NCBI RefSeq assembly: GCF_963921235.1
Contig: NC_086120.1
Location: forward strand, 8,556,001 to 8,620,000
Reading direction: 5' to 3'
From: Mobula hypostoma
Lineage: Eukaryota
Length of the DNA stretch: 64,000 bases
Below the pieces are notes generated by a model that did no database searches, was not told where the DNA came from, and worked only from the letters and a program-made list of their open reading frames with translations. Shown one piece after another: positions 3,720 to 56,505 of the stretch (positions are counted from its first letter, which is position 1; each line of letters begins with the position of its first letter). A program made the position numbers and the translations under genes.

Positions 3720-5323
3720 TCAGGCAAGAGGTAGTAAACACAGGCACCAAACATGGTGGTGCCGTCAACATCACGGCCTCTGTCCCAGATGAGCTCAAGT
3801 GCTTTTAAGCTCGGTTCGATGTCGCTAACTCTGAGCCCCCGAGGAAAGCCACCGCTATAATCTGCAGCTTGATTGCCTCTGAGGCTGAGGTACACTGATG
3901 TTTCCAATGGGTTGACAGTTGCAAGGCGAGTACTCAAGATGTGCACAGCACAACTGGCAGGTGCGTTTACAAACTTTTTAATCTCTCCCTCTCCCAGTGT
4001 AGGGTGCCCTCCTGCTTCAAATTATCCACCATTGTCCCTGTACCAAAAAAGACCAAGGTAACATGGCTGAACGTCTGACATCCTGTCGTGCTCACCTCAA
4101 TAATACACAAATGCTTTGAGAAGCTGGTCAAGAACTACATCTGCAACATGCTACCACTCAAATTCTACCCCATACTGTTTGCCTACCGACATGACAGATT
4201 GACAGACGACGCAATAGCCACTGCTCTACAAACCACCCACGTCTAGAGAAGAAGGATGTTTATGTGAGAATGCTCTTCTTGGAATACAGTTCTGCATTCA
4301 ACACCATAATTCCATCCAGACCCAACAGGAAACATAAAAACACAGAAAATTTTTTTAAAAAACTACCGTACAAAACAGGCCCTTCGGCACACAAAGTTGT
4401 TGCGAACATGCACCTGCCTTAGAAATTACTAGGCTTACCTACAGCCCTCTATTTTTCTAAGCTCAGGGACCTCGGCCTTGACCTTGCCTTCTGCAGCTGG
4501 ATCCTGGACGTCCTGTCAGATCGCCACCAGTGGGAAGAGTGGGCTCCCTCACCTCCACCCCTCTGACTCTCAACGTAGGAGTCCCTCAGGGCTGTACTAA
4601 TTCCCCTCCTTTACTCCCTGTATACCCATCAGTGTGTCGCCACCCAGAGCTCTGATCTACTAATTAACTTTGCCAAGGACGCTACATTGATTGGCCTAAT
4701 CTCAAACAATAACGAGGTGGCCAACAGGGCAGAAGTCATCTTTCTGACACAGTGCGATCAAGAAAACAATCTCTCCTTCAATGTCGCAATAGCAAAAGAG
4801 CTAGTTGTGGATTACAGGAGGAATTGAGACAGGCTAACCCATATTGACATCATTAGACCTAGGATTGAGAGGGTAAACAGCTCTGTATTCCACGGAAGCC
4901 ACATCACTGAGGAGTTCATGTGGTGTGTACACACCAGCTTTGTGGTGAAAAAGGCACAAGAGCGTCTCTTTCATCTCAGACGGTTGAGGAAGTTTGGTAT
5001 GGGGCCCCCAGAATCTAAGAACTTTCTACAGGGGCATAATTGAGAGCACCCTGACTGGCGGCATCACTGTCCGATATGGGAAGTGTATCTCCTTTAATCA
5101 CAGGATTCTGCAGAGAGTGGCATGGACAGCACATCTGGAGTTATGAACTTCCCATGATTCAGGACTTTACAAAGGCAGGTGTGGAAAAAGGGCCAGAAAG
5201 ATCATTGAGGACCGAAGTCAGCCTAAAAATAATCTATTCCAGCTGATACCATCTGGGAACTGTTACCTCAGTACAAAAGCCAGGACCAACAGGCTCTGGG
5301 ATAGCTTCTTCCAACAGGCTATC
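3720..5323 (+). mobile_element. Rex1/Babar-type LINE remnant, 5' part (RT domain, degraded)
   Basis: Decayed RT: ...[12 protein letters not shown](L)[34 protein letters not shown]...KCFEKLVK, followed by a GVPQG-like segment near 4580. It is interrupted at 5323 by the LTR array and resumes at 11841. Confidence 0.8.
4332..4464 (-). mobile_element. Short CR1 3'-end fragment inserted into the Rex RT
   Basis: Contains the CR1-type tail and the 'caggcccttcggc.cacaaagttgt' 3' UTR, also seen at 12880 and 63880. The Rex sequence continues on both sides (aggaa ... gctcaggg). Confidence 0.6.
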
Positions 5324-6462
5324 TGTCATAAGGAGGTGGCTAGGAACGGACCCAAGTGCAAGACACAGACACTGAAGTACTAGGGACAGGACTAGGAGAC
5401 AGGGTGAGGACAAGGACCTGGACACGTAAACTGGGATCCAGGAACAGGACTGGACCAGAGAGCTAGGAGCCCGAGCTTGGACTCCGAGCCAGAGACTGGT
5501 CAAGGACCCAGTACCTGTGTCTTTCCTCTGGCTCAGACCCCAGAACTAGACAAGTACGAGGCTTTTCTGGCAGACAGAACGAGGCTGGAGTCTTCAGACT
5601 TGAGGCTCGAGACTAGAGGCGAGGCTTGGCAGGAGGCAGGAGGCTGGAGTCTTCAGGCTTAAGGCGAGAGACTTCAGGCGATGGTTGGCAGGAGGCAGGA
5701 GGCTGGAGTTTTCAGGTATGATGCTGGAGACTAGAGGCTAGAGGCGAGGCCTTCAGGAGGCAGGAGACTGGAGTCTTCACGCTTGCGGCTAGAGGCATCA
5801 GACGAGGCTTGGCATGAGGCTGGAGGCTGGAGACTTGACTGGAGGCCGGAGACTAGAGGCTCCTCCTGGGTAGGGTGCTGTAATCCTGGGCAGGGCGTGG
5901 AAATCATGGGCAGGGTGCAGAACTCCACCCGATGAAGGCAAAGGTTAGGAAGGGACAGAACAAACCGCAGGTAACGGCAAGATGGCCTGGCTTACCAGAT
6001 GGAAGCAAGGGTTAGGAAGGGACAGAACAAACCGTAGGTAATGACAATACAGCCTGGCTTACCTGGGTGGAGGCAAGGGACAACAATTGAGCTAGGTACA
6101 GGGTGGCGCCAGGACAAGACTCCAACACGAGGCGCGAGTTACCAGCAAAACAAGGCAAGGCTTCAGGCAATACAAGGCAAGACGAGACCTTTAGGTGAGG
6201 CGAGAGTTACCGGCAAGACAAGGCAGGACTTCAGGCGAGGAAACAGAAGGCAGAGGAAGGGATACAAGGAGTAAGGACAAGAACAATCCAGCAACCATGG
6301 CCTGGTCTCTGAAGGTATTTATGCAGCCTGCCCCAACGAGCATCAGCTGCCTCAATTAAAGCTCAACAAGAACAGAAACAGGGTAGACAGGAAATCCTGG
6401 ATCAAGTGTCGATGGACCGGACAATGAACAGGAATACGGACTTCCCGGATCGGACCATGACA
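5324..6462 (-). repeat. LTR A of array (1139 bp, most divergent copy)
   Basis: Runs from TGTCATAAGG to GGACCATGACA and abuts the left TSD. Visibly diverged from copies B-E. Confidence 0.8.
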
Positions 6463-6627
6463 GGACATACCCCGCCTCTCTACAGGAGCCTCCTGGTGAC
6501 CAAACAGGGTATACAGACTATGAATGACATGAGCGGGTGGAAGGATATTTAACAGAAAGGAACACCGGGTGGCAAGAGGAAAATGACAATGTCTGTGTCA
6601 CTGGGTCCATGGGTGGCTGGATTTTTC

Positions 6628-7903
6628 GTCATACTGGGGTAGCTGGAAATGGACCCAAGTGCAAGACACAAACACTGAAGTTCTAGGGACAGGACTAGGA
6701 TACAGGGTGAGGACAAGGACGGACACATAAACTGAGAACCGAGAACAGGACTGGACGAAAAAGCTAGGACCCCTGCTTGGACTTTGAGCCAGAAACTGGA
6801 CAAGGACCCAGTACCTGGGTCTTGCCTCTGGCTCGGAGCCAGAACTGGGCAAGGACCCAGTACCTGGGTCTTGCCTCTGGCTCGGAGCCAGAACTGGGCA
6901 AGGACACAGTACCTGGGTCTTGCCTCTGGCTCGGAGCCAGAACTGGGCAAGGATGAGGTTTGGCTGGCAGGCAGTACAAGGCTGGAGTCTTCAGGCTTCA
7001 GGGTAGAGACCAGAGGTGAGACTTGCCAGGAACAGGATGCAGGAGCCTTCAGACTTGAGGGTAGAGACTTGAGGCGAGGCTTGGCAGGAGGCAGGAGGCT
7101 GGAGTCTTCAGGCTTGAGGCTTGGCAGGAGGCAGGAGGCTGGAGTCTTCAGGCTTGAGGCTGGAGAGTTCAAGCAAGGCTTGGCAGGAGGCTGGAGGCTG
7201 GATACTTGACTGGAGGAAGAGACTAGAGGCTCCTATTGGGTAGGGCACGGTAATCCTGGGCAGGGCCCGGTACTCCTGGGCAGGGCGCGGAACTCCACCC
7301 GATGGAGGCAAGGGACAGGAAGGGACAGAACCAACTGTAGGTAACGGCAAGATGGCCTGGCTTACGCAACGGAGGCAAGGGCTAGGAAGGGACAGAACAA
7401 ACAGCAGGTAACGGCAATACGGCCTGGCTTACCCGACGGAGGCAAGGGACTGGAAGGGACAGAACCAACTGCCGGTAACAGCAAGACGGCCTGGCTTACC
7501 TGGTCAGAGGCAAGGGACAGGAAGGGAGCTAGGTACAGTGTGGCTCCAGGACAAGACTGCAGGCGACATGAGGTGAGAGTTACCAGCAAGACAAGGCAAG
7601 GTTTCAGACAATGCAAAGAGAAATGAGACCTTCAGATGAGGCGAGAGTTACCGGCAAGACAAGACAGGACTTCAGGCGAGGAAGCAGAAGGCAGAGGAAG
7701 GGATACAAGGAGTAAGGACAAGAACAATCCAGCAGCCATGCCCTGGTCTCTGAAGGTACTTATGCAGCCTGCCCCAATGAGCATCAGCTGCCTCAATTAA
7801 AGCTCAACAAGAACAGAAACAGGGTAGACAGGAAATCCTGGAGCAAGTGTCGATGGACCGGACCATGAACAGGAATACGGACTTCCCGGACCGGACCATG
7901 ACA
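6628..7903 (-). repeat. LTR B of array (1276 bp)
   Basis: Runs from (T deleted)GTCATACTGG to GGACCATGACA. Near-identical to LTR C at a period of 1441 bp. Confidence 0.85.
6802..6948. repeat. 3 x 49-bp palindrome-containing tandem repeat inside LTR B (also 8243-8389 in LTR C)
   Basis: Unit AAGGACCCAGTACCTGGGTCTTGCCTCTGGCTCGGAGCCAGAACTGGGC starts at 6802, 6851 and 6900. It contains GACCCAG-TAC-CTGGGTC and CTGGCTC-G-GAGCCAG inverted repeats. Confidence 0.9.
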
Positions 7904-8068
7904 GGACACACCCCGCCTCTCTACAGGAGCCTCCTGGTGACCAAACAGGGTATCCAGACTATGAATGACCTGGGCGGGTGGAAGGGTATTTAACAGAAAG
8001 GAACACCGGGTGGCAAGAGGAAAATGACAGTGTCTGTGTCGCTGGGTCCATGGGTGGCTGGATTTTTC

Positions 8069-9344
8069 GTCATACTGGGGTAGCTGGAAATGGACCCAAG
8101 TGCAAGATACAAACACTGAAGTTCTAGGGACAGGACTAGGATACTGGGTGAGGACAAGGATGGACACATAAACTGAGAACCGAGAACAGGACTGGACGAA
8201 AAAGCTAGGACCCCTGCTTGGACTTTGAGCCAGAAACTGGACAAGGACCCAGTACCTGGGTCTTGCCTCTGGCTCGGAGCCAGAACTGGGCAAGGACCCA
8301 GTACCTGGGTCTTGCCTCTGGCTCGGAGCCAGAACTGGGCAAGGACACAGTACCTGGGTCTTGCCTCTGGCTCGGAGCCAGAACTGGGCAAGGATGAGGT
8401 TTGGCTGGCAGGCAGTACAAGGCGGGAGTCTTCAGGCTTCAGGGTAGAGACCAGAGGTGAGACTTGCCAGGAACAGGATGCAGGAGCCTTCAGACTTGAG
8501 GGTAGAGACTTGAGGCGAGGCTTGGCAGGAGGCAGGAGGCTGGAGTCTTCAGGCTTGAGGCTTGGCAGGAGGCAGGAGGCTGGAGTCTTCAGGCTTGAGG
8601 CTGGAGAGTTCAAGCAAGGCTTGGCAGGAGGCTGGAGGCTGGATACTTGACTGGAGGAAGAGACTAGAGGCTCCTATTGGGTAGGGCGCGGTAATCCTGG
8701 GCAGGGCCCGGTACACCTGGGCAGGGCGCGGAACTCCACCCGATGGAGGCAAGGGACAGGAAGGGACAGAACCAACTGTAGGTAACGGCAAGATGGCGTG
8801 GCTTACGCAACGGAGGCAAGGGCTAGGAAGGGACAGAACAAACAGCAGGTAACGGCAATACGGCCTGGCTTACCCGACGGAGGCAAGGGACTGGAAGGGA
8901 CAGAACCAACTGCCGGTAACAGCAAGACGGCCTGGCTTACCTGGTCAGAGGCAAGGGACAGGAAGGGAGCTAGGTACAGTGTGGCTCCAGGACAAGACTG
9001 CAGGCGACATGAGGTGAGAGTTACCAGCAAGACAAGGCAAGGTTTCAGACAATGCAAAGAGAAATGAGACCTTCAGATGAGGCGAGAGTTACCGGCAAGA
9101 CAAGACAGGACTTCAGGCGAGGAAGCAGAAGGCAGAGGAAGGGATACAAGGAGTAAGGACAAGAACAATCCAGCAGCCATGCCCTGGTCTCTGAAGGTAT
9201 TTATGCAGCCTGCCCCAACGAGCATCAGCTGCCTCAATTAAAGCTCAACAAGAACAGAAACAGGGTAGACAGGAAATCCTGGAGCAAGTGTCGATGGACC
9301 GGACCATGAACAGGAATACGGACTTCCCGGACCGGACCATGACA
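8069..9344 (-). repeat. LTR C of array (1276 bp)
   Basis: Same terminal 1-nt deletion and same 3 x 49-bp repeat as LTR B. Confidence 0.85.
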
Positions 9345-9509
9345 GGACACACCCCGCCTCTCTACAGGAGCCTCCTGGTGACCAAACAGGGTATCCAGAC
9401 TATGAATGACCTGGGCGGGTGGAAGGGTATTTAACAGAAAGGAACACCGGGTGGCAAGAGGAAAATGACAGTGTCTGTGTCGCTGGGTCCATGGGTGGCT
9501 GGATTTTTC

Positions 9510-10582
9510 TGTCATACTGGGGTAGCTGGAAATGGACCCAAGTGCAAGACACAAACACTGAAGTTCTAGGGACAGGACTAGGATACAGGGTGAGGACAAG
9601 GACGGTCACATAAACTGAGAACCGAGAACAGGACTGGACGAAAAAGCTAGGACCCCTGCTTGGACTCCGAGCCAGAAACTGGACAAGGACCCAGTACCTG
9701 GGTCTTGCCTCTGGCTCGGACCCAGAACTGGGCAAGGATGAGGTTTGGCTGGCAGGCAGAACGAGGCTGGAGTCTTCAGGCTTGAGGGTAGAGACCAGAG
9801 GTGAAGCTTGGCAGGAGCAGGATGCAGGAGCCTTCAGACTTGAGGCTAGAGACTTGAGGCGAGGCTTGGCAGGAGGCTGGAGGCTGGAGTCTTCAGGCTT
9901 GAGGCTAGAGAGTTCAAGTGAGGCTTGGCAGGAGGCTGGAGGCTGGATACTTGATTGGAGGCCAGAGGCTAGAGGCTCCTCTTGGGTAGGGCGCGGTAAT
10001 CCTGGGCTGGTCCCGGTACTCCTGGGCAGGGCGCGGAACTCCACCCGACGGAGGCAAGGGACAGGAAGGGACAGAACAAACAGCAGGTAACGGGAATACA
10101 GCCTGGCTTACCCGGCGGAGGCAAGGGACTGGAAGGGACAGAACCAACTGCCGGTAATAGCAAGACGGCCTGGCTTACCTGGTCGGAGGCAAGGGACAGG
10201 AAGGGAGCTAGGTACAGTGTGTTTCCAGGACAAAACTGCAGGCGACATGAGGCAAGAGTTACCAGCAAGACAAGGCAAGGTTTCAGATAATGCAAAGAGA
10301 AATGAGACCTTCAGGTGAGGCGAGAGTTACCGGCAAGACAAGGCAGGACTTCAGGCGAGGAAACAGAAGGCAGAGGAAGGGATACAAGGAGTAAGGACAA
10401 GAACAATCCAGCAGCCACGCCCTGGTCTCTGAAGGTATTTATGCAGCCAGCCCCAACGAGCATCAGCTGCCTCAATTAGAGCTCAACAAGAACAGAAACA
10501 GGTTAGACAGGAAAACCTGGAGCAAGGGTCGATGGACCGGACCGTGAACCAGAATACGGACTTCACGGACCGGACCATGACA
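9510..10582 (-). repeat. LTR D of array (1073 bp)
   Basis: Intact TGTCAT...ATGACA termini; single 49-bp unit. Confidence 0.85.
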
Positions 10583-10747
10583 GGACACACCCCGCCTCTC
10601 TACAGGAGCCTCCTGGCGACCAAACAGGGTATACAGACTATGAATGACCTGGGCGGGTGGAAGGGTATTTAACAGAAAGGAACACCGGATGGCAAGAGGA
10701 AAATGACAGTGTCTGTGTCACTGGGTCTATGGGTGGCTGGATTTTTC

Positions 10748-11840
10748 TGTCATACTGGGGTAGCTGGAAACGGACCCAAGTGAAAGACACAAACACTGAA
10801 GTTCTAGGGACAGGACTAGGATACAGGGTAAGGACAAGGACGGTCACATAAACTGAGAATCGAGAACAGGACTGGACGAAAAAGCTAGGACCCCTGCTTG
10901 GACTCCGAGCCAGAAACTGGACAAGGACCCAGTACCAGGGTCTTGCCTCTAGCTCGGACCCAGAACTGGGTAAGGATGAGGTTTGGCTGGCAGGCAGAAC
11001 GAGGCTGGAGTCTTCAGGCTTGAGGGTAGAGACCAGAGGTGAGGCTTGGCAGGAGGCAGGACGCAGGAGTCTTCAGGTTTGAGGTTAGAGACTTGAGGCG
11101 AGGCTTGGCAGGAGGCAGGAGGCTGGAGTCTTCAGGCTTGAAGCTAGAGACTTCAAGTGAGGCTTGGCAGGAGGCTGGAGGCTGGATATTTGACTGGGGG
11201 CCAGAGGCTAGAGGCACCTCTTGGGTAGGGCGCGGTAATCCTGGGCAGGGCCCGGTACCCCTGGGCAGGGCGCGGAACTCCTGGGCAGGGTGGGGATCTC
11301 CACCCGATGGGACAAGGGACAGGAAGGGACAGAACAAACAGCAGGTAACGGCAATACTGCCTGGTTTACCCGACGAAGGCAAGGGACTGGATGTGACAGA
11401 ACCAACTGCCGGTAACAGCAAGACGGCCTGGCTTACCTGGTCGGAGGCAAGGGACAGGAAGGGAGCTAGGTACAGTATGGCTCCAGGACAAGACTGCAGG
11501 CGACATGAGGCGAGAGTTACCAGCAAGACAAGGTAAGGTTTCAGACAATGCAAAGCGAAATGAGAACTTCAGGTGAGGCAAGAGTTACCGGCAAGACAAG
11601 GCAGGACTTCAGGCGAGGAAACAGAAGGCAGAGGAAGGGATACAAGGAGTAAGGACAAGAACAATCCAGCAGCCACGCCCTGGTCTCTGAAGGTATTTAT
11701 GCAGCTAGCCCCAACAAGCATCAGCTGCCTCAATTAGAGCTCAACCAGAACAGAAACAGGGTAGACAGGAAAACCTGGAGCAAGTGTCGATAGACCGGAA
11801 CATGAACCGGAATACGGACTTCACGGACTGGACCATGATG
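10748..11840 (-). repeat. LTR E of array (1093 bp)
   Basis: Runs from TGTCAT to GGACCATGATG and abuts the right TSD CTATC. Confidence 0.85.
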
Positions 11841-12036
11841 CTATCAGACTGATTAACTCACACTGATTTGAGTGTATTTCTATGTTACATTTTCTGTTCT
11901 ATTTACTATAAATTACTATGAATTATTACCATTACACTTTGCATATTTATATGGAGACACAACATAAACATTTTTACTCCTCATGTACCTGAAAGATTAA
12001 GAAATAAAATCAATTCAATTCAATTTAATTCAATTC
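11841..12036 (+). mobile_element. Rex1/Babar LINE remnant, 3' end with (CAATT)n tail
   Basis: Continues the sequence broken at 5323 (caggctatc|agactgattaactc) and ends in aataaaat-caattcaattcaatttaattcaattc. Confidence 0.75.
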
Positions 12037-12879
12037 CTCTGCCAGAGGTGAAAGCCAGTGACACAAAATTCAATGAGTACCTTTCCTGTTGCAGAGAGGT
12101 GGGAGATGTCTCTATAGTTTTTGCAATTATCTTTTTCAGCCGTTTTGAAGAGTGTGACTGTCAGGACATTCCTGAGGTCAGCTTAAATCTTTTCCTGATC
12201 CCAGATCTTGATTAACAGATCATGAATATGATTTAGAAGTTCTGTGCCACCTTCCTAGAGGATTTCTGCTGGAGTTCCTTCAGGCCCAGTACTTTTGTTG
12301 TTCCTCAGTTTCTTGCAAGCCACTTGCTCCTCTTTGATACAAGGAGGCTTAATCATGTCGTCCTTCATGGGTCTTCTGCTTGACAATGTCAGTGTCCACT
12401 GTGGTGTTGCTGTTAAGCAGCTCTTGCAAGTGTTACTTCCATCGAGAATTTAGGACCTCATAGTCCAGCCGAGCAAAGGGGAGTTCGGCCACAGTGGTTT
12501 GGGACATACACTGTCTTGCTGGGGGAGGTACAGAGGCCCACGCTTTGGAGGTTAATAAGTAGAATCTGTATGCCTGCAGACTATGGGAGGAAATTGGAAC
12601 ATCCTGTATGCAAGGAAATGTTCAGCAGGGTCTATCAGCTCCTCATTCACTGCAAAAGATGTATGAATGTAACAGTCTCTTGCTCACTGCTGAATGAGGG
12701 AATGCCCCTGCATTCAAATGGTCTCTGTCCTCGATGCTATTGGAGAATGGTACTGAAGTTCTGGGTTGGTGATTTATGGATTGGACAACAGTTCAATTCC
12801 ACTCTTTCCATTTTATGTTTTATTATTCTGTGTTTTTGCCCATTTTTCCTTATTGCATTTGCCCGATATAGAACATAGA

Positions 12880-24466: not shown

Positions 24467-25540
24467 CATAGAAGCATAGAAACATAGAAAATAGGTGCAG
24501 AGTAGGCTATTCAGCCCTTCGAGCCTGCACCACTGTTTATTATGATCGTGGCTGATCATCCAACTCAGAACCCTGCCCCAGCCTTCCCTCCATATCCCCT
24601 GATCCCCATAGCCACAAGGGCCACATCTAACTCCCTCTTAAATATAGCCAATGAACTGGCCTCAACTGTTTCCTGTGGCAGAGAATTCCACAGATTCACC
24701 ACTCTCTGTTTGAAGAAGTTTTTCCTCATCTCGGTCCTAAAAGGCTTCCCCTTTATCCTCAAACTGTGACCCCTCATTCTGGACTTCCCCAACATCGGGA
24801 ACAATCTTCCTGCATCTAGCCTGTCCAATCCCTTTAGGATTTTATACGTTTTAATCAGATCCCCCCTCAATCTTCTAAATTCCAACGAGTACAAGCCCAG
24901 TTCATCCAGTCTTTCTTCATATGAAAGTCCTGCCATCCCAGGAATCAATTTGGTGAACCTTGTTTGTACTCCCTCTATGGCAACGATGTCTTTCCTCAGA
25001 TTAGGGGACCAAAACTGCACACAATACTCCAGGTGTGGTCTCACCAAGGCCTTGTACAACTGCAGTAGTACCTCCCTGCTCCTGTATTCGAATCCTCTCG
25101 CTATAAATGCCAGCATACCATTCGCCTTTTTCACCGCCTGCTGTACCTGCATGCCCACTTTCAATGACTGGTGTATAATGACACCCAGGTCTCGTTGCAC
25201 CTCCCCTTTTCCTAATCGGCCACCATTCAGATAATAATCTCTTTTCCTATTTTTGCCACCAAAGTGGATAACTTCACATTTATCCACATTAAATTGCATC
25301 TGCCATGAATTTGCCCACTCACCCAACCTATCCAAGTCACTCTGCATCCTCTTAGCATCCTCCTCACAGCTAACACTGCCACCCAGCTTCGTGTCATCCG
25401 CAAACTTGGAGATGCTGCATCTAATTCCCTCATCCAAGTCATTAATATATATTGTAAACAACTGGGGTCCCAGCACTGAGCCTTGCGGTACCCCACTAGT
25501 CACCGCCTGCCATTCTGAAAAGGTCCCGTTTATTCCCACA
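24467..25540 (-). mobile_element. Young 5'-truncated CR1 LINE
   Basis: Uninterrupted 324-aa frame (24565-25539) with GVPQGSVLGP and FADD RT motifs. The 3' UTR and (CTATGTTT)-type tail match the 50.6-52.9 kb copy. Confidence 0.95.
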
Positions 25541-33283: not shown

Positions 33284-33453
33284 NNNNNNNNNNNNNNNNN
33301 NNNNNNNNNNNNNNNNNNNNNNNNNNNNNNNNNNNNNNNNNNNNNNNNNNNNNNNNNNNNNNNNNNNNNNNNNNNNNNNNNNNNNNNNNNNNNNNNNNNN
33401 NNNNNNNNNNNNNNNNNNNNNNNNNNNNNNNNNNNNNNNNNNNNNNNNNNNNN
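33284..33453. other. Assembly gap (170 N)
   Basis: Run of N. Confidence 1.
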
Positions 33454-34013: not shown

Positions 34014-34195
34014 NNNNNNNNNNNNNNNNNNNNNNNNNNNNNNNNNNNNNNNNNNNNNNNNNNNNNNNNNNNNNNNNNNNNNNNNNNNNNNNNNNNNNNN
34101 NNNNNNNNNNNNNNNNNNNNNNNNNNNNNNNNNNNNNNNNNNNNNNNNNNNNNNNNNNNNNNNNNNNNNNNNNNNNNNNNNNNNNNNNNNNNNNN
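34014..34195. other. Assembly gap (182 N)
   Basis: Run of N. Confidence 1.
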
Positions 34196-50647: not shown

Positions 50648-52874
50648 AGGTTCTGAACTTAAAGAGGGGTAACTTTGAAGGTATGAGACATGAATTAGCT
50701 AAGATAGACTGGCAAATGACACTTCAAGGATTGACGGTGGATATGCAATGGCAGGCATTTAAAGGTTGCATGGATGAACTACAACAATTGTTCATCCCAG
50801 TTTGGCAAAAGAATAAATCAAGGAAGGTAGTGCACCCGTGGCTGACAAGAGAAATTAGGGATAGTATCAATTCCAAAGAAGTAGCATACAAATTAGCCAG
50901 AGAAAGTGGCTCACCTGAGGACTGGGAGAAATTCAGAGTTCAGCAGAGGAGGACAAAGGGCTTAATTAGGAAGGGGAAAAAAGATTATGAGAGAAAACTG
51001 GCAGAGAACATAAAAACGGACTGTAAAAGCTTTTATAGATATGTAAAAAGGAAAAGACTGATAAAGACAAATGTAGGTCCCCTGCAAACAGAAACAGGTG
51101 AATTGATTATGGGGAGCAAGGACATGGCAGACCAATTGAATAATTACTTTGGTTCTGTCTTCACTAAGGAGGACATAAATAATCTTCCAGAAATAGTAAG
51201 GGACAGAGGGTCCAGTGAGATGGAGGAACTGAGCGAAATACATGTTAGTAGGGAAGTGGTGTTAGGTAAATTGAAGGGATTGAAGGCAGATAAATCCCCA
51301 GGGCCAGATGGTCTGCATCCCAGAGTGCTTAAGGAAGTGGCCCAAGAAATAGTGGATGCATTAGTGATAATTTTTCAAAACTCGTTAGATTCTGGACTAG
51401 TTCCTGAGGATTGGAGGGTGGCTAATGTAACCCCACTTTTTAAAAAAGGAGGGAGAGAGAAACCGGGGAATTATAGGCCGGTTAGCCTAACGTCGGTGGT
51501 GGGGAAACTGCTGGAGTCAGTTATCAAGGATGTGATAACAGCACATTTGGAAAGCGGTGAAATGATCGGACAAAGTCAGCATGGATTTGTGAAAGGAAAA
51601 TCATGTCTGACGAATCTCATAGAATTTTTTGAGGATGTAACTAGTAGAGTGGATAGGGGAGAACCAGTGGATGTGGTATATTTGGATTTTCAAAAGGCTT
51701 TTGACAAGGTCCCACACAGGAGATTAGTGTGCAAACTTAAAGCACATGGTATTGGGGGTAAGGTATTGGTGTGGGTGGAGAATTGGTTAGCAGACAGGAA
51801 GCAAAGAGTGGGAATAAACGGGACCTTTTCAGAATGGCAGGCGGTGACTAGTGGGGTACCGCAAGGCTCAGTGCTGGGACCCCAGTTGTTTACAATATAT
51901 ATTAATGACTTGGATGAGGGAATTAAATGCAGCATCTCCAAGTTTGCGGATGACACGAAGCTGGGTGGCAGTGTTAGCAGTGAGGAGGATGCTAAGAGGA
52001 TGCAGGGTGACTTGGATAGGTTGGGTGAGTGGGCAAACTCATGGCAGATGCAATTTAATGTGGATAAATGTGAAGTTATCCACTTTGGTGGCAAAAATAG
52101 GAAAACAGATTATTATCTGAATGGTGGCCGATTAGGAAAAGGGGAGGTGCAACGAGACCTGGGTGTCATTATACACCAGTCATTGAAAGTGGGCATGCAG
52201 GTACAGCAGGCGGTGAAAAAGGCGAACGGTATGCTGGCATTTATAGCGAGAGGATTCGAGTACAGGAGCAGGGAGGTACTACTGCAGTTGTACAAGGCCT
52301 TGGTGAGACCACACCTGGAGTATTGTGTGCAGTTTTGGTCCCCTAATCTGAGGAAAGACATCCTTGCCATAGAGGGAGTACAAAGAAGGTTCACCAGATT
52401 GATTCCTGGGATGGCAGGTCTTTCATATGAAGAAAGACTGGATGAACTGGGCTTGTACTCGTTGGAATTTAGAAGATTGAGGGGGGATCTGATTGAAACG
52501 TATAAGATCCTAAAGGGATTGGACAGGCTAGATGCGGGAAGATTGTTCCCGATGTTGGGGAGGTCTAGAACGAGGGGTCACAGTTTGAGGATAGAGGGGA
52601 AGCCTTTTAGGACCGAGGTTAGGAAAAACTTCTTCACACAGAGAGTGGTGAATCTGTGGAATTCTCTGCCACAGCAAACTGTTGAGGCCAGTTCATTAGC
52701 TATGTTTAAAAGGAAGTTAGATATGGCCCTTGTGGCTACAGGGGTCACGGGGTATGGAGGGAAGGCTGGGTTCTGAGTTGGATGATCAGCCATGATCATA
52801 ATAAATGGCGGTGCAGGCTCGAAGGGCCGAATGGCCTACTCCTGCACCTATTTTCTATGTTTCTATGTTTCTAT
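50648..52874 (+). mobile_element. Young 5'-truncated CR1 LINE
   Basis: Open ORF2 fragment plus 3' UTR ending in (CTATGTTT)n; the APE domain and ORF1 are absent. Confidence 0.97.
50683..52776 (+). CDS. CR1 ORF2 fragment, reverse transcriptase (697 aa, uninterrupted)
   Basis: KSPGPDG, NYRPVSLTS, QHGF, DFQKAFDKV, GVPQGSVLGP, FADD and the CR1 C-terminal LEYCVQFW...RGH..K...NLWNSLP motifs. Confidence 0.92.
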   Translation: MRHELAKIDWQMTLQGLTVDMQWQAFKGCMDELQQLFIPVWQKNKSRKVVHPWLTREIRDSINSKEVAYKLARESGSPEDWEKFRVQQRRTKGLIRKGKKDYERKLAENIKTDCKSFYRYVKRKRLIKTNVGPLQTETGELIMGSKDMADQLNNYFGSVFTKEDINNLPEIVRDRGSSEMEELSEIHVSREVVLGKLKGLKADKSPGPDGLHPRVLKEVAQEIVDALVIIFQNSLDSGLVPEDWRVANVTPLFKKGGREKPGNYRPVSLTSVVGKLLESVIKDVITAHLESGEMIGQSQHGFVKGKSCLTNLIEFFEDVTSRVDRGEPVDVVYLDFQKAFDKVPHRRLVCKLKAHGIGGKVLVWVENWLADRKQRVGINGTFSEWQAVTSGVPQGSVLGPQLFTIYINDLDEGIKCSISKFADDTKLGGSVSSEEDAKRMQGDLDRLGEWANSWQMQFNVDKCEVIHFGGKNRKTDYYLNGGRLGKGEVQRDLGVIIHQSLKVGMQVQQAVKKANGMLAFIARGFEYRSREVLLQLYKALVRPHLEYCVQFWSPNLRKDILAIEGVQRRFTRLIPGMAGLSYEERLDELGLYSLEFRRLRGDLIETYKILKGLDRLDAGRLFPMLGRSRTRGHSLRIEGKPFRTEVRKNFFTQRVVNLWNSLPQQTVEASSLAMFKRKLDMALVATGVTGYGGKAGF

Positions 52875-54200: not shown

Positions 54201-54859
54201 CCGAAACATCAGTCTAATGTCGTGTTTAACTTTAAGCCAGCAGCGCATCTATTAGGTGTACCTTGTTGACCTATGCAGTTCACGCATCTATACATATATC
54301 TCGTAATTATTTATTTAAACAAATAAGAACACTCAGTTAAACTATGTATGTACTGAAATAAGTAAAATATTACGCAAATAATACTGAATATTAACTACAC
54401 AAAGGTGTGATTTTGCTTTGATTCTCCAAGGACTGTGCATTGTGAACCGTCTTCCTGGCTCCATCTTGGATTTCCAGAAGCTCCCGGAAGATGGCCCGGG
54501 TGTTTTCCAAACTAGAGAAACAAGGGATGGGCCACACCCTGCGCCAGCAGCAGCAACCCTGAGAGGGTGCCAGGGAGGGATTGAACGCCATATTGAATGA
54601 CTGATGTGGGATCCGGTATTCTGCACCTTCTACCCTGTTGTAACTGGAAGCGGGAGAGGCATCTCTGTTCCGAGAGATGGAATCAAGGAAATGAAGGGAG
54701 AGTATGGGAAATGTCAGACAATGAACGACCTGCTCATCTGCACGTTGTCTTGAACAGATATGTCAGTTACTGATGGTATCATCGCCTCAATCCGGTGGCG
54801 TGTGACGGTGAATGGGAGGGCTTCCAATCCTTCCTCTGGTTGGTCAGTGGGAGTCGCAC

Positions 54860-54900
54860 TGATTTGCATGGATTTCCTCCTGGAACGAATGGCCTTATAA
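54860..54900 (+). promoter_or_regulatory. Immunoglobulin light-chain promoter: decamer/octamer plus TATA
   Basis: TGATTTGCAT at 54860-54869 (octamer ATTTGCAT, in light-chain orientation) and TTATAA at 54895-54900, about 85 nt upstream of the leader ATG. Confidence 0.9.
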
Positions 54901-54982
54901 CTGGGGTCCATTGGCAGCGGCGGCCACAGTCCATCACAGATCCACCGGCAGAACGGAAGCAAGAAGCTGAGGGGCAAGAACA

Positions 54983-55028
54983 ATGCGGACGCTGTGTTTT
55001 TTCTGGTCTCTATCAGTGTGGCTGGGCT
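54983..55028 (+). CDS. Ig light chain exon 1 (leader L1, MRTLCFFWSLSVWLG + 1 nt)
   Basis: 46-nt phase-1 hydrophobic leader exon with donor T|GTAAGT at 55029, followed by a 103-nt intron ending tttcacAG at 55131. Confidence 0.9.
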
Positions 55029-55131
55029 GTAAGTAGAGGCAGCAAGTCTGCACCGCCTGTGTTTGCTGGGGTGGGTTTTGGAGTCGCGTTGAAGAGTCAA
55101 TCCTTAAAGTTGAATTCCTGTTCTTTCACAG

Positions 55132-55488
55132 GTGGGGAGTCCCAGACTCTGACTCAGCCTCCAACCGTGTCGGTGAATCCAGGAGCCACGGCCACGCTGA
55201 ATTGTAACATCGGAACAAAGGATAGCTATGGTGTTGGCTGGTACAAGCAGACACCGGGAACAGTTCCACAGTTGGTCGTATATCGCTATTATTCCTCGAG
55301 TAGCCCAAGCTACGGCCCTGGGTTTAGCAGCGACCGTTTCACGTCGACAGTCAACAGCGCCGGCACCGAGTACCCGTTGAGCATAAAGAACACGGAGAAG
55401 AGTGACGCCGCCGTCTATTACTGCGGAAAGTGGTTTTCATCCACCAATACTGTCGGATTCGGCCGAGGGACCAAGCTCTTTATTGCAG
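55132..55488 (+). CDS. Ig light chain exon 2: L2 + germline-joined V-J (sigma/sigma-cart, type I/NS5-like)
   Basis: CGES|QTLTQPP...LNC...VGWYKQTPG...YRYYSSSSPSYGPGFSSDRF (long CDR2)...DAAVYYC-GKWFSSTNTVG-FGRGTKLFIA. V and J are in frame with no RSS heptamer/nonamer between them. The isotype is assigned from the long CDR2 and recalled family features. Confidence 0.95.
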
Positions 55489-56505
55489 GCAAGTGACGGG
55501 AATAAAATAATGAATAGCTTAAGTACGGTCACTGGCATTTAATAATTGTAACGTTATTATTATTACCTGCGAATTTTACAGTGAAAATGTTGATTTACAA
55601 TCCGTGCCCAGTGTCAGTTTTACTCGATAGAGTTGCGTTCGGTGAATCGTTTCCGTCTTTTAATGAAGCATTTCTCTTTTCGGTTGTCTTTTCGGACAAA
55701 CTCTCCTTCAGCACCCATCCATTGAAAGACGCTCTCCCACTGCCCAGTCCTTGCCTCCTCTCCTGCCACGTGTTCCCCTCTGTGCTCCTGTTTTTTTTTT
55801 CAGGGGCGCTGTTCAATGATCCAGGCCACTACACCAACTATGACCAGAGCTCCCATTCTGCGGAGAATCCAACCTCCCCATCACCAGAGAGATTGGGAGC
55901 AAAATCCCTTGACATCATCCCAGATCACAGAGCGACCTACCCTACCTCGTTCAATGTAGCTCGGGACCGTGCATTTGGTGTTCTCGCCCATTTGGGGGAA
56001 GACAGATTGTGGCTTGTGTTTAATCTCTCGACAGCAGCGGGGCCATTTCTGATGGTGGGTAGGGCCGAGGGTGGAGGAGGAACTTGAAATACAGCGCTCA
56101 GCAATTATCAGTGGCCTCTCCTATCTTGTGTCAAGAACTGAGAATGGACTCAACTAAATAAACACGGCCCTACTGCCCACTGCCATACTGGACTGAGACA
56201 CCTCTATCGAGAATGATAAAGGGGCTGATGGCACAGAGAGTGGGCACTGCCCTGGGGCATTTTGATGCCAGTGTGTCTCTCAACTCCGTGAATGACTCAG
56301 AACTCAGCATCCTCACCGGTTGGAATAGATTTGTAGTTGGCAAACATGAAGTGTCCTTCTCCGCATCTCTAACTCCCCCTGATGCCTGTCCCTCCGTGAG
56401 ATACTTGGCCAAAGTCTATGAAGCTGGGATGTTTAACTTGAGCTTACGTTAAAGTGTGAAATCTTCTGTTATTTTGAAACACGTCTTGTCTTGTTCATTT
56501 TACAG

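What the first reader, a model, noticed from the sequence alone, without database searches (positions are those of the whole stretch)
5319..11845. Five-LTR tandem array of a coding-less miniature gypsy element inserted as one unit
Seen directly: a Rex LINE is split cleanly, with CTATC duplicated on both sides. The insert is LTR(1139)-165-LTR(1276)-165-LTR(1276)-165-LTR(1073)-165-LTR(1093). Each 165-bp spacer keeps only the PBS, the first gag codons (ATGGACCCAGCG, MDPA) and the pol-end/PPT. Established knowledge: 5-bp TSDs and MDPA-type gag starts fit Tf1/sushi chromoviral gypsy elements, and tandem TRIM arrays are known mainly from plants. Inference: this is a non-autonomous, tandemly amplifying TRIM-like family in a cartilaginous fish, which I am not aware of having been described.
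Basis: partly seen in the sequence, partly recalled or inferred. Interest (0 to 1): 0.8.

Follow-up and report, generated by a model that had tools for sequence, protein, structure and literature searches.

The report
Five-LTR array of non-coding retroelement
A tiny, gene-less jumping element with very long end-repeats landed once in an old LINE copy of a stingray genome and then most likely multiplied in place to five repeats, which is a known kind of structure and not a new one.

Summary
Window 5324-11840 is LTR(1139)-165-LTR(1276)-165-LTR(1276)-165-LTR(1073)-165-LTR(~1093). The ends read TGTCAT..ATGACA. The array sits inside a degenerate LINE 3' end and is flanked by a duplicated (G)CTATC. 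That duplicate carries a T private to this LINE copy on both sides, so it is a true target-site duplication.

The 165-bp interior has no detectable coding homology. It is multi-copy in two species' sequencing runs, but far rarer than the LTR, and most LTR copies end in unrelated DNA.

"Inserted as one unit" is not supported:
- The outer LTRs are the least alike (about 86%).
- LTR2-5 differ by 4-7%, while units 2 and 3 differ by only 0.6%.
- LTR1 is a mosaic: 16% divergent up to about 6196, then 3% (p = 2e-10).

Stepwise growth in place by unequal LTR-LTR recombination fits best.

Strand and Gypsy/Tf1 ancestry stay open. The "gag start" ATGGACCCA is one arm of a stem whose other arm lies in the LTR.

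It is not a strict TRIM, because a monomer is about 2.5 kb. Tandem LTR arrays are already described in plants, Drosophila, yeast, kangaroos and zebrafish. First readers of this scan noted similar arrays at five or more other places in this genome; those notes are unchecked.

Verdict: new member of a known kind, with modest interest.

The parts
5319..5323 (.). Left copy of the target-site duplication, CTATC (GCTATC if it is 6 bp, from 5318)
   Evidence: One search shows that other copies of the LINE have this site once, as GCCATC.
5324..6462 (.). LTR1 (1139 bp), a mosaic. Positions 5324 to about 6196 are of the common family type and are 16% from LTR2-5. From about 6197 to 6462 it belongs to the local lineage and is 3-7% from the others.
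   Evidence: (Fisher p down to 2e-10).
6463..6627 (.). Spacer 1, the 165-bp internal region
6628..7903 (.). LTR2 (1276 bp). It lacks the first T of TGTCAT.
7904..8068 (.). Spacer 2, identical to spacer 3
8069..9344 (.). LTR3 (1276 bp), 99.3% identical to LTR2. This is the youngest duplication.
9345..9509 (.). Spacer 3
9510..10582 (.). LTR4 (1073 bp)
   Evidence: One search shows hundreds of family contigs leaving the sequence exactly after 10582, which confirms the LTR boundary.
10583..10747 (.). Spacer 4. The ATG of the proposed gag start reads ATA here.
10748..11840 (.). LTR5. It ends ATGATG instead of ATGACA, or ends at 11839 if the duplication is 6 bp.
11841..11845 (.). Right copy of the target-site duplication, CTATC
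3899..5323 (+). Degenerate host LINE with stops and frameshifts. It has RT-like pieces and a C-terminal PF09004 piece, and its ORF end ..FFQQAI is cut by the insertion.
11846..12070 (+). Rest of the same LINE: RLINSH*, the 3' UTR and a (TCAAT)n-like tail. Multi-copy depth ends at about 12075.
9469..9560 (-). Hairpin across the spacer/LTR-start junction, with 13-bp and 9-bp stems. It recurs at 6587-6677, 8028-8118 and 10707-10798. The loop holds the LTR end and GAAAAATCCAGCCACCC.
   Evidence: Minus-strand RNA z-scores are -3.1 to -4.4, against -1.3 to -2.8 for the plus strand.
9198..9242 (+). TATTTAT (9198-9204) followed by ATTAAA (9237-9242) on the plus strand of each LTR. ATTAAA is intact in LTR1-3 only. 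On the minus strand the same box reads CATAAATA.
9376..9391 (+). TGGTGACCAAACAGGG (TGGCGACC.. in spacer 4, 10614-10629). It matches the tRNA-Lys3 primer-binding 16-mer at 13-14 of 16 positions and lies 31 nt after the LTR end.
   Evidence: 5e-5 of shuffles
9352..9363 (-). Purine tract AGAGAGGCGGGG on the minus strand, 7 nt from the LTR
9167..9174 (-). AATCCAGC in the LTR. On the minus strand it complements the post-LTR GCTGGATT/AATCCAGC segment at 9498-9505 and lies about 30 nt downstream of CATAAATA.

Best explanation
This is a non-autonomous LTR retroelement with very long LTRs (1.1-1.3 kb, full of minisatellites) around a 165-bp non-coding interior.

One copy integrated into the 3' end of a LINE and made a 5-6-bp target-site duplication (shown). 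The two LTRs are long and lie only 165 bp apart. Misaligned homologous recombination between LTRs, on sister chromatids or homologues, then added LTR+165 units in register at different times (inferred). The last step duplicated unit 2 into unit 3. The reciprocal products of such exchanges are solo LTRs, which fits the large excess of LTR ends without the spacer in the read data.

The 5' 870 bp of LTR1 was replaced by, or derives from, the commoner LTR subfamily. Ectopic gene conversion is the most likely cause (inferred).

The family as a whole would be copied in trans by an unidentified autonomous LTR element (inferred). The strand is unresolved, at roughly 60:40 for the minus strand. On that strand a double stem brackets the LTR end and a short sequence complementary to an LTR segment just downstream of a TATA-like box, which is the layout of a Tf1-type self-primed element.
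For: Structure and TSD.

Layered ages:
- LTR2 vs LTR3 differ at 9 of 1276 sites, and spacers 2 and 3 are identical.
- LTR2/3, LTR4 and LTR5 differ by 4.4-6.7%.
- The outer pair, LTR1 and LTR5, is the most divergent. This holds even in the 3' 270 bp (6.7%, tied with LTR2-LTR5).

One local lineage: all four spacers share four states that differ from the family majority. LTR2-5, and LTR1 beyond about 6196, share lineage-specific states.

Chimeric pattern: the internal LTR2 and LTR3 are closest to LTR4/5 in the 5' part and to LTR1 in the 3' part. A crossover between a downstream and an upstream LTR predicts exactly this.

Family data: the spacer is multi-copy in two species. Its summed contig depth is roughly 20-50 times below that of the LTR. 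LTR ends are mostly followed by heterogeneous sequence.

No coding capacity.

Hairpin at the junction, favouring the minus strand.

Precedent and mechanism for tandem LTR arrays: PMC11899658.
Against: - Divergence layers could already have existed in a source array, so growth in place at this locus is inferred and not observed.
- No orthologous empty or shorter allele was examined.
- The LTR1 mosaic needs an extra event.
- Other first-reader notes describe many such arrays, each within one TSD. That could also point to a replication-linked origin.
- Strand evidence conflicts. The plus strand has TATTTAT followed by ATTAAA and a tRNA-Lys3-like 16-mer. The minus strand has no poly(A) hexamer and would need an R-U5 of more than 1 kb.
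- No autonomous partner was found.
Confidence: 0.6

Rival explanations
1. The array was made before or during integration and inserted in one step. The source could be a read-through multi-LTR transcript, transcription of a one-LTR circle, or recombination between cDNAs into a multimer.
For: - The whole array has one TSD.
- The three lineages LTR2/3, LTR4 and LTR5 are roughly equidistant at 4.4-6.7%, as if formed together.
- This route has been proposed for TRIM arrays and for weak LTR terminators (PMC11899658).
- Unchecked first-reader notes report several similar arrays in this genome.
Against: - A single TSD does not discriminate between the two models.
- Reverse transcription of one RNA makes the two outer LTRs identical, yet here they are the least alike, and LTR1 is a mosaic of two subfamilies.
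- Units 2 and 3 are about ten times closer to each other than to the rest, so at least one unit was added later.
- The RNA-like runs hold LTR pieces but none of the spacer.
Confidence: 0.17
2. A solo LTR of the common subfamily was already at this site. A mini-element cDNA or circle of the rarer subfamily then entered it by homologous recombination without integrase, giving the mosaic LTR1 and the first tandem unit.
For: - The LTR1 5' part carries family-majority states where LTR2-5 share minority states, with a sharp switch at about 6196.
- Integrase-independent entry into resident elements is known in yeasts (cited in PMC11899658; PMC11042837 listed).
Against: A single reciprocal crossover predicts that the last LTR is of the resident type beyond the crossover point. 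LTR5 instead shares the local-lineage states at 11606, 11738 and 11747. It is also no more divergent in its 3' part than LTR4.
Confidence: 0.1
3. Part of the array, the near-identical units 2 and 3, is an assembly artefact such as two haplotypes placed in tandem. The true locus would then have four LTRs.
For: - Units 2 and 3 differ by only 9 of 1441 sites.
- No independent spanning read could be examined. One search used contigs only, and no listed piece spans the stretch.
Against: Nine fixed differences are more than an assembly stutter would leave. The array is only 6.5 kb, short enough for single long reads to span. The other units differ by 4-16% and cannot be collapsed or inflated by mis-assembly.
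Confidence: 0.05

Closest known systems
Tandem LTR-retrotransposon structures (LTR-int-LTR-int-LTR inside one TSD), as catalogued in rice and other plants (PMC11899658)
   Same: - LTRs alternate with internal regions and share internal LTRs.
- One 5-bp-class TSD flanks the whole array.
- It is inserted in another transposon.
- The same two candidate origins are debated: recombination between LTRs versus formation during retrotransposition.
   Different: - The plant cases kept coding internal regions; here the interior is 165 bp and non-coding.
- The host is a cartilaginous fish.
- The LTRs within this array are much more diverged, and one is a subfamily mosaic.
TRIM tandem arrays: maize Wukong (PMC4528315), plant Cassandra (PMC7215508) and zebrafish LTR-11_DR/Helenus (PMC10886601)
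   Same: - A non-autonomous LTR element with a very short non-coding interior.
- More LTRs than interiors in the genome.
- Tandem arrays that share LTRs.
   Different: - TRIMs are defined as under 1 kb with short LTRs. This monomer is about 2.4-2.7 kb with 1.1-1.3-kb LTRs.
- No tRNA- or 5S-like pol III module in the LTR.
- No clear tRNA primer site next to the LTR.
Kangaroo KERV and walbRep megasatellites (Koga et al. 2023 and Hayashi et al. 2022, as cited in PMC11899658)
   Same: - A vertebrate example of tandem repeats that keep the LTR-interior-LTR register.
- It is explained by recombination between the two LTRs of one element.
   Different: - KERV units are full proviruses forming centromeric megabase arrays.
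- Here there are five small units at an ordinary interspersed site.
Tf1/sushi-type self-primed Ty3/Gypsy elements (Tf1, Tj1; PMC4600332)
   Same: On the minus strand, a sequence 4 nt after the LTR complements an LTR segment about 30 nt downstream of a TATA-like box. It is bracketed by U5-leader-type stems. The TSD is of the 5-bp class.
   Different: - Only 8 contiguous complementary bases.
- The transcription start is unknown.
- R-U5 would be over 1 kb.
- There is no coding sequence to place the element in that clade.

Membership tests
LTR retrotransposon (generic) | Long direct terminal repeats ending TG...CA | tested here: met
   Five direct repeats run TGTCAT...ATGACA. Family contigs break exactly at the LTR end.
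LTR retrotransposon (generic) | 4-6-bp target-site duplication | tested here: met
   (G)CTATC lies on both sides. The site is single-copy in other copies of the LINE.
LTR retrotransposon (generic) | Primer-binding site next to the 5' LTR and polypurine tract next to the 3' LTR | tested here: inconclusive
   Minus strand: an 8-nt self-complementary site 4 nt from the LTR, and a purine tract 7 nt from the LTR. Plus strand: a tRNA-Lys3-like 14/16 match, but 31 nt from the LTR, and no clean purine tract.
TRIM (terminal-repeat retrotransposon in miniature) | Whole element shorter than about 1 kb with short LTRs (definition as given in PMC10886601) | tested here: not met
   The LTRs are 1073-1276 bp, so a monomer would be about 2.4-2.7 kb.
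TRIM (terminal-repeat retrotransposon in miniature) | No coding capacity; interior reduced to priming signals | tested here: met
   The interior is 165 bp. There are no Pfam hits, no word-based hits and no exhaustive HMMER hits.
Ty3/Gypsy, Tf1/sushi clade | RT/IN (and chromodomain) phylogeny | not testable with these tools
   There is no coding sequence in the element. No autonomous relative could be fetched.
Ty3/Gypsy, Tf1/sushi clade | Self-priming: the primer site is complementary to the 5' end of the element's own mRNA | tested here: inconclusive
   There are 8 exact nucleotides, or 12 with one mismatch. Smith-Waterman score against shuffles gives p 0.02-0.14. The position relative to CATAAATA and the flanking stems fits, but the transcription start is not known.
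Helenus / Cassandra / Ajax (TRIMs with a pol III module) | tRNA- or 5S-derived sequence inside the LTR | tested here: not met
   ARAGORN finds none. Rfam gives no hit near any gathering score.
Retrozymes | Hammerhead ribozyme in the repeats | tested here: not met
   No ribozyme match in Rfam at E up to 1.
Tandem LTR-RT structure (sensu PMC11899658) | Alternating LTRs and internal regions in register, one TSD, no extra internal TSDs | tested here: met
   The junctions are identical in all units.

The most novel reading that the evidence does not exclude
The family makes multi-LTR arrays as a regular product of its own replication, for example through read-through or circle-templated multimer RNAs or through cDNA concatemers. 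Each integration would then seed a small tandem array. That would make it a vertebrate retroelement that generates proto-satellites directly.
Probability: 0.15. Interest if true: 0.6.

Novelty: new member of a known kind. Interest (0 to 1): 0.3.

Why it matters
It is a clean, datable example in a cartilaginous fish of how an LTR element with long repeats and almost no interior turns into a short tandem array. This is the first step on the route from transposon to satellite DNA. With the sister arrays noted elsewhere in this genome, the family could settle an open question for TRIM-like arrays: are they born at integration, or do they grow afterwards? Neither the structure nor the likely mechanism is new, so the value is as a case study and for repeat annotation of ray genomes.

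Tried and rejected
- **Other copies in the window:** none of the LTR or spacer lies outside the array (BLAST). No uninterrupted paralogue of the LINE site exists in the window.
- **Proteins:** Pfam on spacer/LTR ORFs found nothing. A word-based search of the ORF spanning the spacer found nothing. An exhaustive HMMER search of the stop-free minus-strand frame (spacer plus LTR start) against 1.84 billion proteins gave 0 hits. No evidence was found for gag or pol remnants.
- **Rfam and ARAGORN on the array:** only sub-threshold miRNA-like hits on the palindromic 49-mer. There is no ribozyme, tRNA or 5S.
- **Metagenome scans** for two conserved LTR motifs, to fetch other copies: no match.
- **Hypermutation or editing as the cause of LTR1's divergence:** rejected, because the substitution spectrum is mixed.
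- **A resident solo LTR plus one reciprocal crossover:** disfavoured by the state of LTR5's 3' part.
- **A larger 'true' LTR including spacer ends** (plus-strand AAGAGGAAAA|TG... and ...TCTACA): rejected, because the array edges, the TSD and hundreds of family contigs end at TGTCAT/ATGACA.
- **RNA evidence for strand or activity:** the RNA-like runs are contigs only. They cover LTR pieces and none of the spacer, so they say nothing about strand.
- **Covariation in the junction hairpin:** none is possible with four related copies.
Full report
**1. What is there**

Five direct repeats of 1139, 1276, 1276, 1073 and about 1093 bp are separated by four spacers of exactly 165 bp, from window 5324 to 11840.

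- The repeats begin TGTCAT and end ATGACA. LTR2 and LTR3 lack the first T, and LTR5 ends ATGATG.
- Length differences are copy-number changes in internal minisatellites of 49, 59, 20 and 67 bp.
- The 49-mer is a strong palindrome.
- No other copy of the LTR or the spacer lies in the 64-kb window.

**2. The insertion site**

The left flank is a decayed LINE. It has RT-like pieces and a PF09004 C-terminal piece. Its frame ends ..FFQQAI at 5323 and resumes RLINSH* at 11846. It is followed by a 3' UTR and a (TCAAT)n-like tail.

Contigs of other copies of this LINE in public runs read ..CCAGGCC|ATCAGACTG across the site (loose ends at 11843). The window has GGCTATC on the left and GCTATC on the right. 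The site is therefore duplicated, and this copy's private T is present on both sides. This is a genuine 5- or 6-bp target-site duplication of a cleanly split LINE.

I did not test the label 'Rex'. It rests on motif memory.

**3. Family context**

Only contigs were available.

- The LTR is very abundant in the source species and in a second species.
- Hundreds of contigs leave the sequence exactly after 10582, the LTR end. They run into mutually unlike sequence, as solo or terminal LTRs do.
- The 165-bp spacer is multi-copy in both species, with 25-40 distinct contigs at its variant sites in one run and 7-26 in the other.
- The spacer's summed depth is roughly 20-50 times lower than the LTR's. 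The tool warns that this is not a copy number.
- The right half of the spacer is 2-6 times deeper than the left half, which hints at relatives with other interiors.
- The RNA-like runs hold LTR pieces and none of the spacer.

The refutation condition 'spacer only at this locus' therefore fails: the family is real. First readers of this scan noted similar 3-, 4- and 7-LTR arrays and two-LTR monomers at other places in this genome. These notes are unchecked and I could not read those loci.

**4. History of the array**

Pairwise identities are layered.

| Comparison | Divergence |
|---|---|
| LTR2 vs LTR3 | 0.7%, with identical spacers |
| Among LTR2/3, LTR4, LTR5 | 4.4-6.7%, uniform along the LTR |
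| LTR1 vs all others, up to about window 6196 | 16% |
| LTR1 vs the others, after about 6196 | 3-7% (3.0-3.7% vs LTR2/3) |

- The LTR1 switch is significant (Fisher p 1e-8 to 2e-10; the maximum chi-square breakpoint is at 6196).
- The LTR1-private changes have a mixed spectrum, so they are not editing.
- I used the family-majority letters as an outside reference. LTR1's 5' part carries the majority state at eight sites where LTR2-5 share a minority state. Beyond the breakpoint all five LTRs share minority states. All four spacers share four minority states.
- So LTR2-5, the tail of LTR1 and the spacers are one local lineage. The head of LTR1 is of the commoner subfamily.

**5. One step or growth in place?**

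A single TSD is expected under both models. Reverse transcription of one RNA, however long, makes the two outer LTRs identical. Here they are the least alike. Units 2 and 3 are about ten times closer to each other than to the rest, so at least one unit was added long after the others.

LTR2 and LTR3 are closest to LTR4/5 in the 5' part and to LTR1 in the 3' part. This is the chimera expected from a crossover between a downstream and an upstream LTR.

I therefore favour a single integration followed by repeated unequal LTR-LTR recombination. LTRs of 1.2 kb lying only 165 bp apart would make that easy, and the reciprocal products are solo LTRs. LTR1's head needs one more event, most simply ectopic gene conversion from one of the many common-type LTRs.

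A resident solo LTR entered by homologous recombination is disfavoured, because LTR5's 3' part is of the local lineage.

I cannot exclude that the three older lineages were formed together at integration. This remains the main rival, and at family level it is the most interesting open possibility.

**6. Strand and ancestry**

This is unresolved.

- A purine tract, AGAGAGGCGGGG, lies 7 nt from the LTR.
- The sequence 4 nt after the LTR, AATCCAGC.., complements an LTR segment about 30 nt downstream of CATAAATA. This is 8 nt exact, and p is only 0.02-0.14 on its own.
- A 13-bp plus 9-bp double stem brackets the LTR end and that site in all four units. It folds better as minus-strand RNA (z -3.1 to -4.4, against -1.3 to -2.8). 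This is the layout of U5-leader stems around a primer site.

Evidence for the plus strand:
- TATTTAT is followed 39 nt later by ATTAAA near the LTR's 3' end. The minus strand has no poly(A) hexamer in any LTR and would need an R-U5 of more than 1 kb.
- Between subfamilies, the variable part is the plus-strand 5' part and the conserved part is the 3' 270 bp.
- Spacer nucleotides 32-47 match the tRNA-Lys3 primer-binding 16-mer at 14 of 16 positions (5e-5 of shuffles, before correction for the number of tRNAs). They lie 31 nt from the LTR.

The proposed gag start, ATGGACCCA, is the 3' arm of the inner stem, and its partner lies in the LTR. It reads ATA in spacer 4. The ORF behind it is 30 codons long.

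No frame of the spacer or LTR start has any protein relative. 'Gypsy, Tf1/sushi' is thus a reasonable lead and not a result.

**7. Comparison with what is known**

Tandem LTR-interior-LTR arrays inside one TSD are documented in several groups:
- rice and other plants, with the same two mechanisms under debate (PMC11899658);
- plant TRIMs such as Wukong and Cassandra;
- Drosophila and yeasts, as cited in PMC11899658;
- kangaroo KERV megasatellites;
- zebrafish, where tandem arrays of the TRIM LTR-11_DR are reported (PMC10886601).

I found no paper describing such a family in cartilaginous fishes. The library has no TE databases, so Repbase and Dfam were not checked.

The element fails the TRIM size criterion. 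It carries no pol III module or ribozyme.

**8. Verdict**

- It is a new member of a known kind.
- Interest is modest. Its main use is as a datable vertebrate example of array growth from an LTR element, and as a test case if the genome-wide census is done.

Noticed in passing
window 6786-6953 and 8227-8394 (single copies in LTR1, 4, 5): A 49-bp minisatellite inside the LTR. Each unit is a near-perfect palindrome. 3.4 copies fold with z = -7.3 and give sub-threshold miRNA-like Rfam hits.
   Followed up: partly
window 11070-11136 (59-bp repeat region of the LTR): The 59-bp GGAGGCTGGAGTCTTCAGGCTTGAGGCT-type repeat has by far the highest summed contig depth in both species (over 1e6), with many joints that skip or repeat units. 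It is probably also present as independent minisatellite or satellite arrays. An earlier follow-up in this genome (s1-141961) describes such an expansion.
   Followed up: no
window 50683-52776 (+): An open 697-aa ORF with a reverse-transcriptase domain (RVT_1, E = 5.6e-34). It may be a fairly young LINE ORF2. An RT fragment lies at 24565-25539 (-).
   Followed up: partly
window 54795-55496 (+): An ORF with an immunoglobulin V-set domain (E = 2.8e-18).
   Followed up: no
window 33284-33453 and 34014-34195: Two runs of N, 170 and 182 bases. They were left untouched.
   Followed up: no
window 10668-10747 versus 10601-10667: The right-hand half of the spacer is 2-fold (species A) to 6-fold (species B) deeper in contigs than the left half. 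Other elements may share only that end. This is a possible handle on the autonomous partner or on sister mini-families.
   Followed up: no
window 10748-10895: Many family contigs diverge from this array's LTRs upstream of 10896 (loose ends). LTR1 resembles that commoner version. The LTR family therefore has at least two subfamilies that differ in the first 150 bp or so and beyond.
   Followed up: partly
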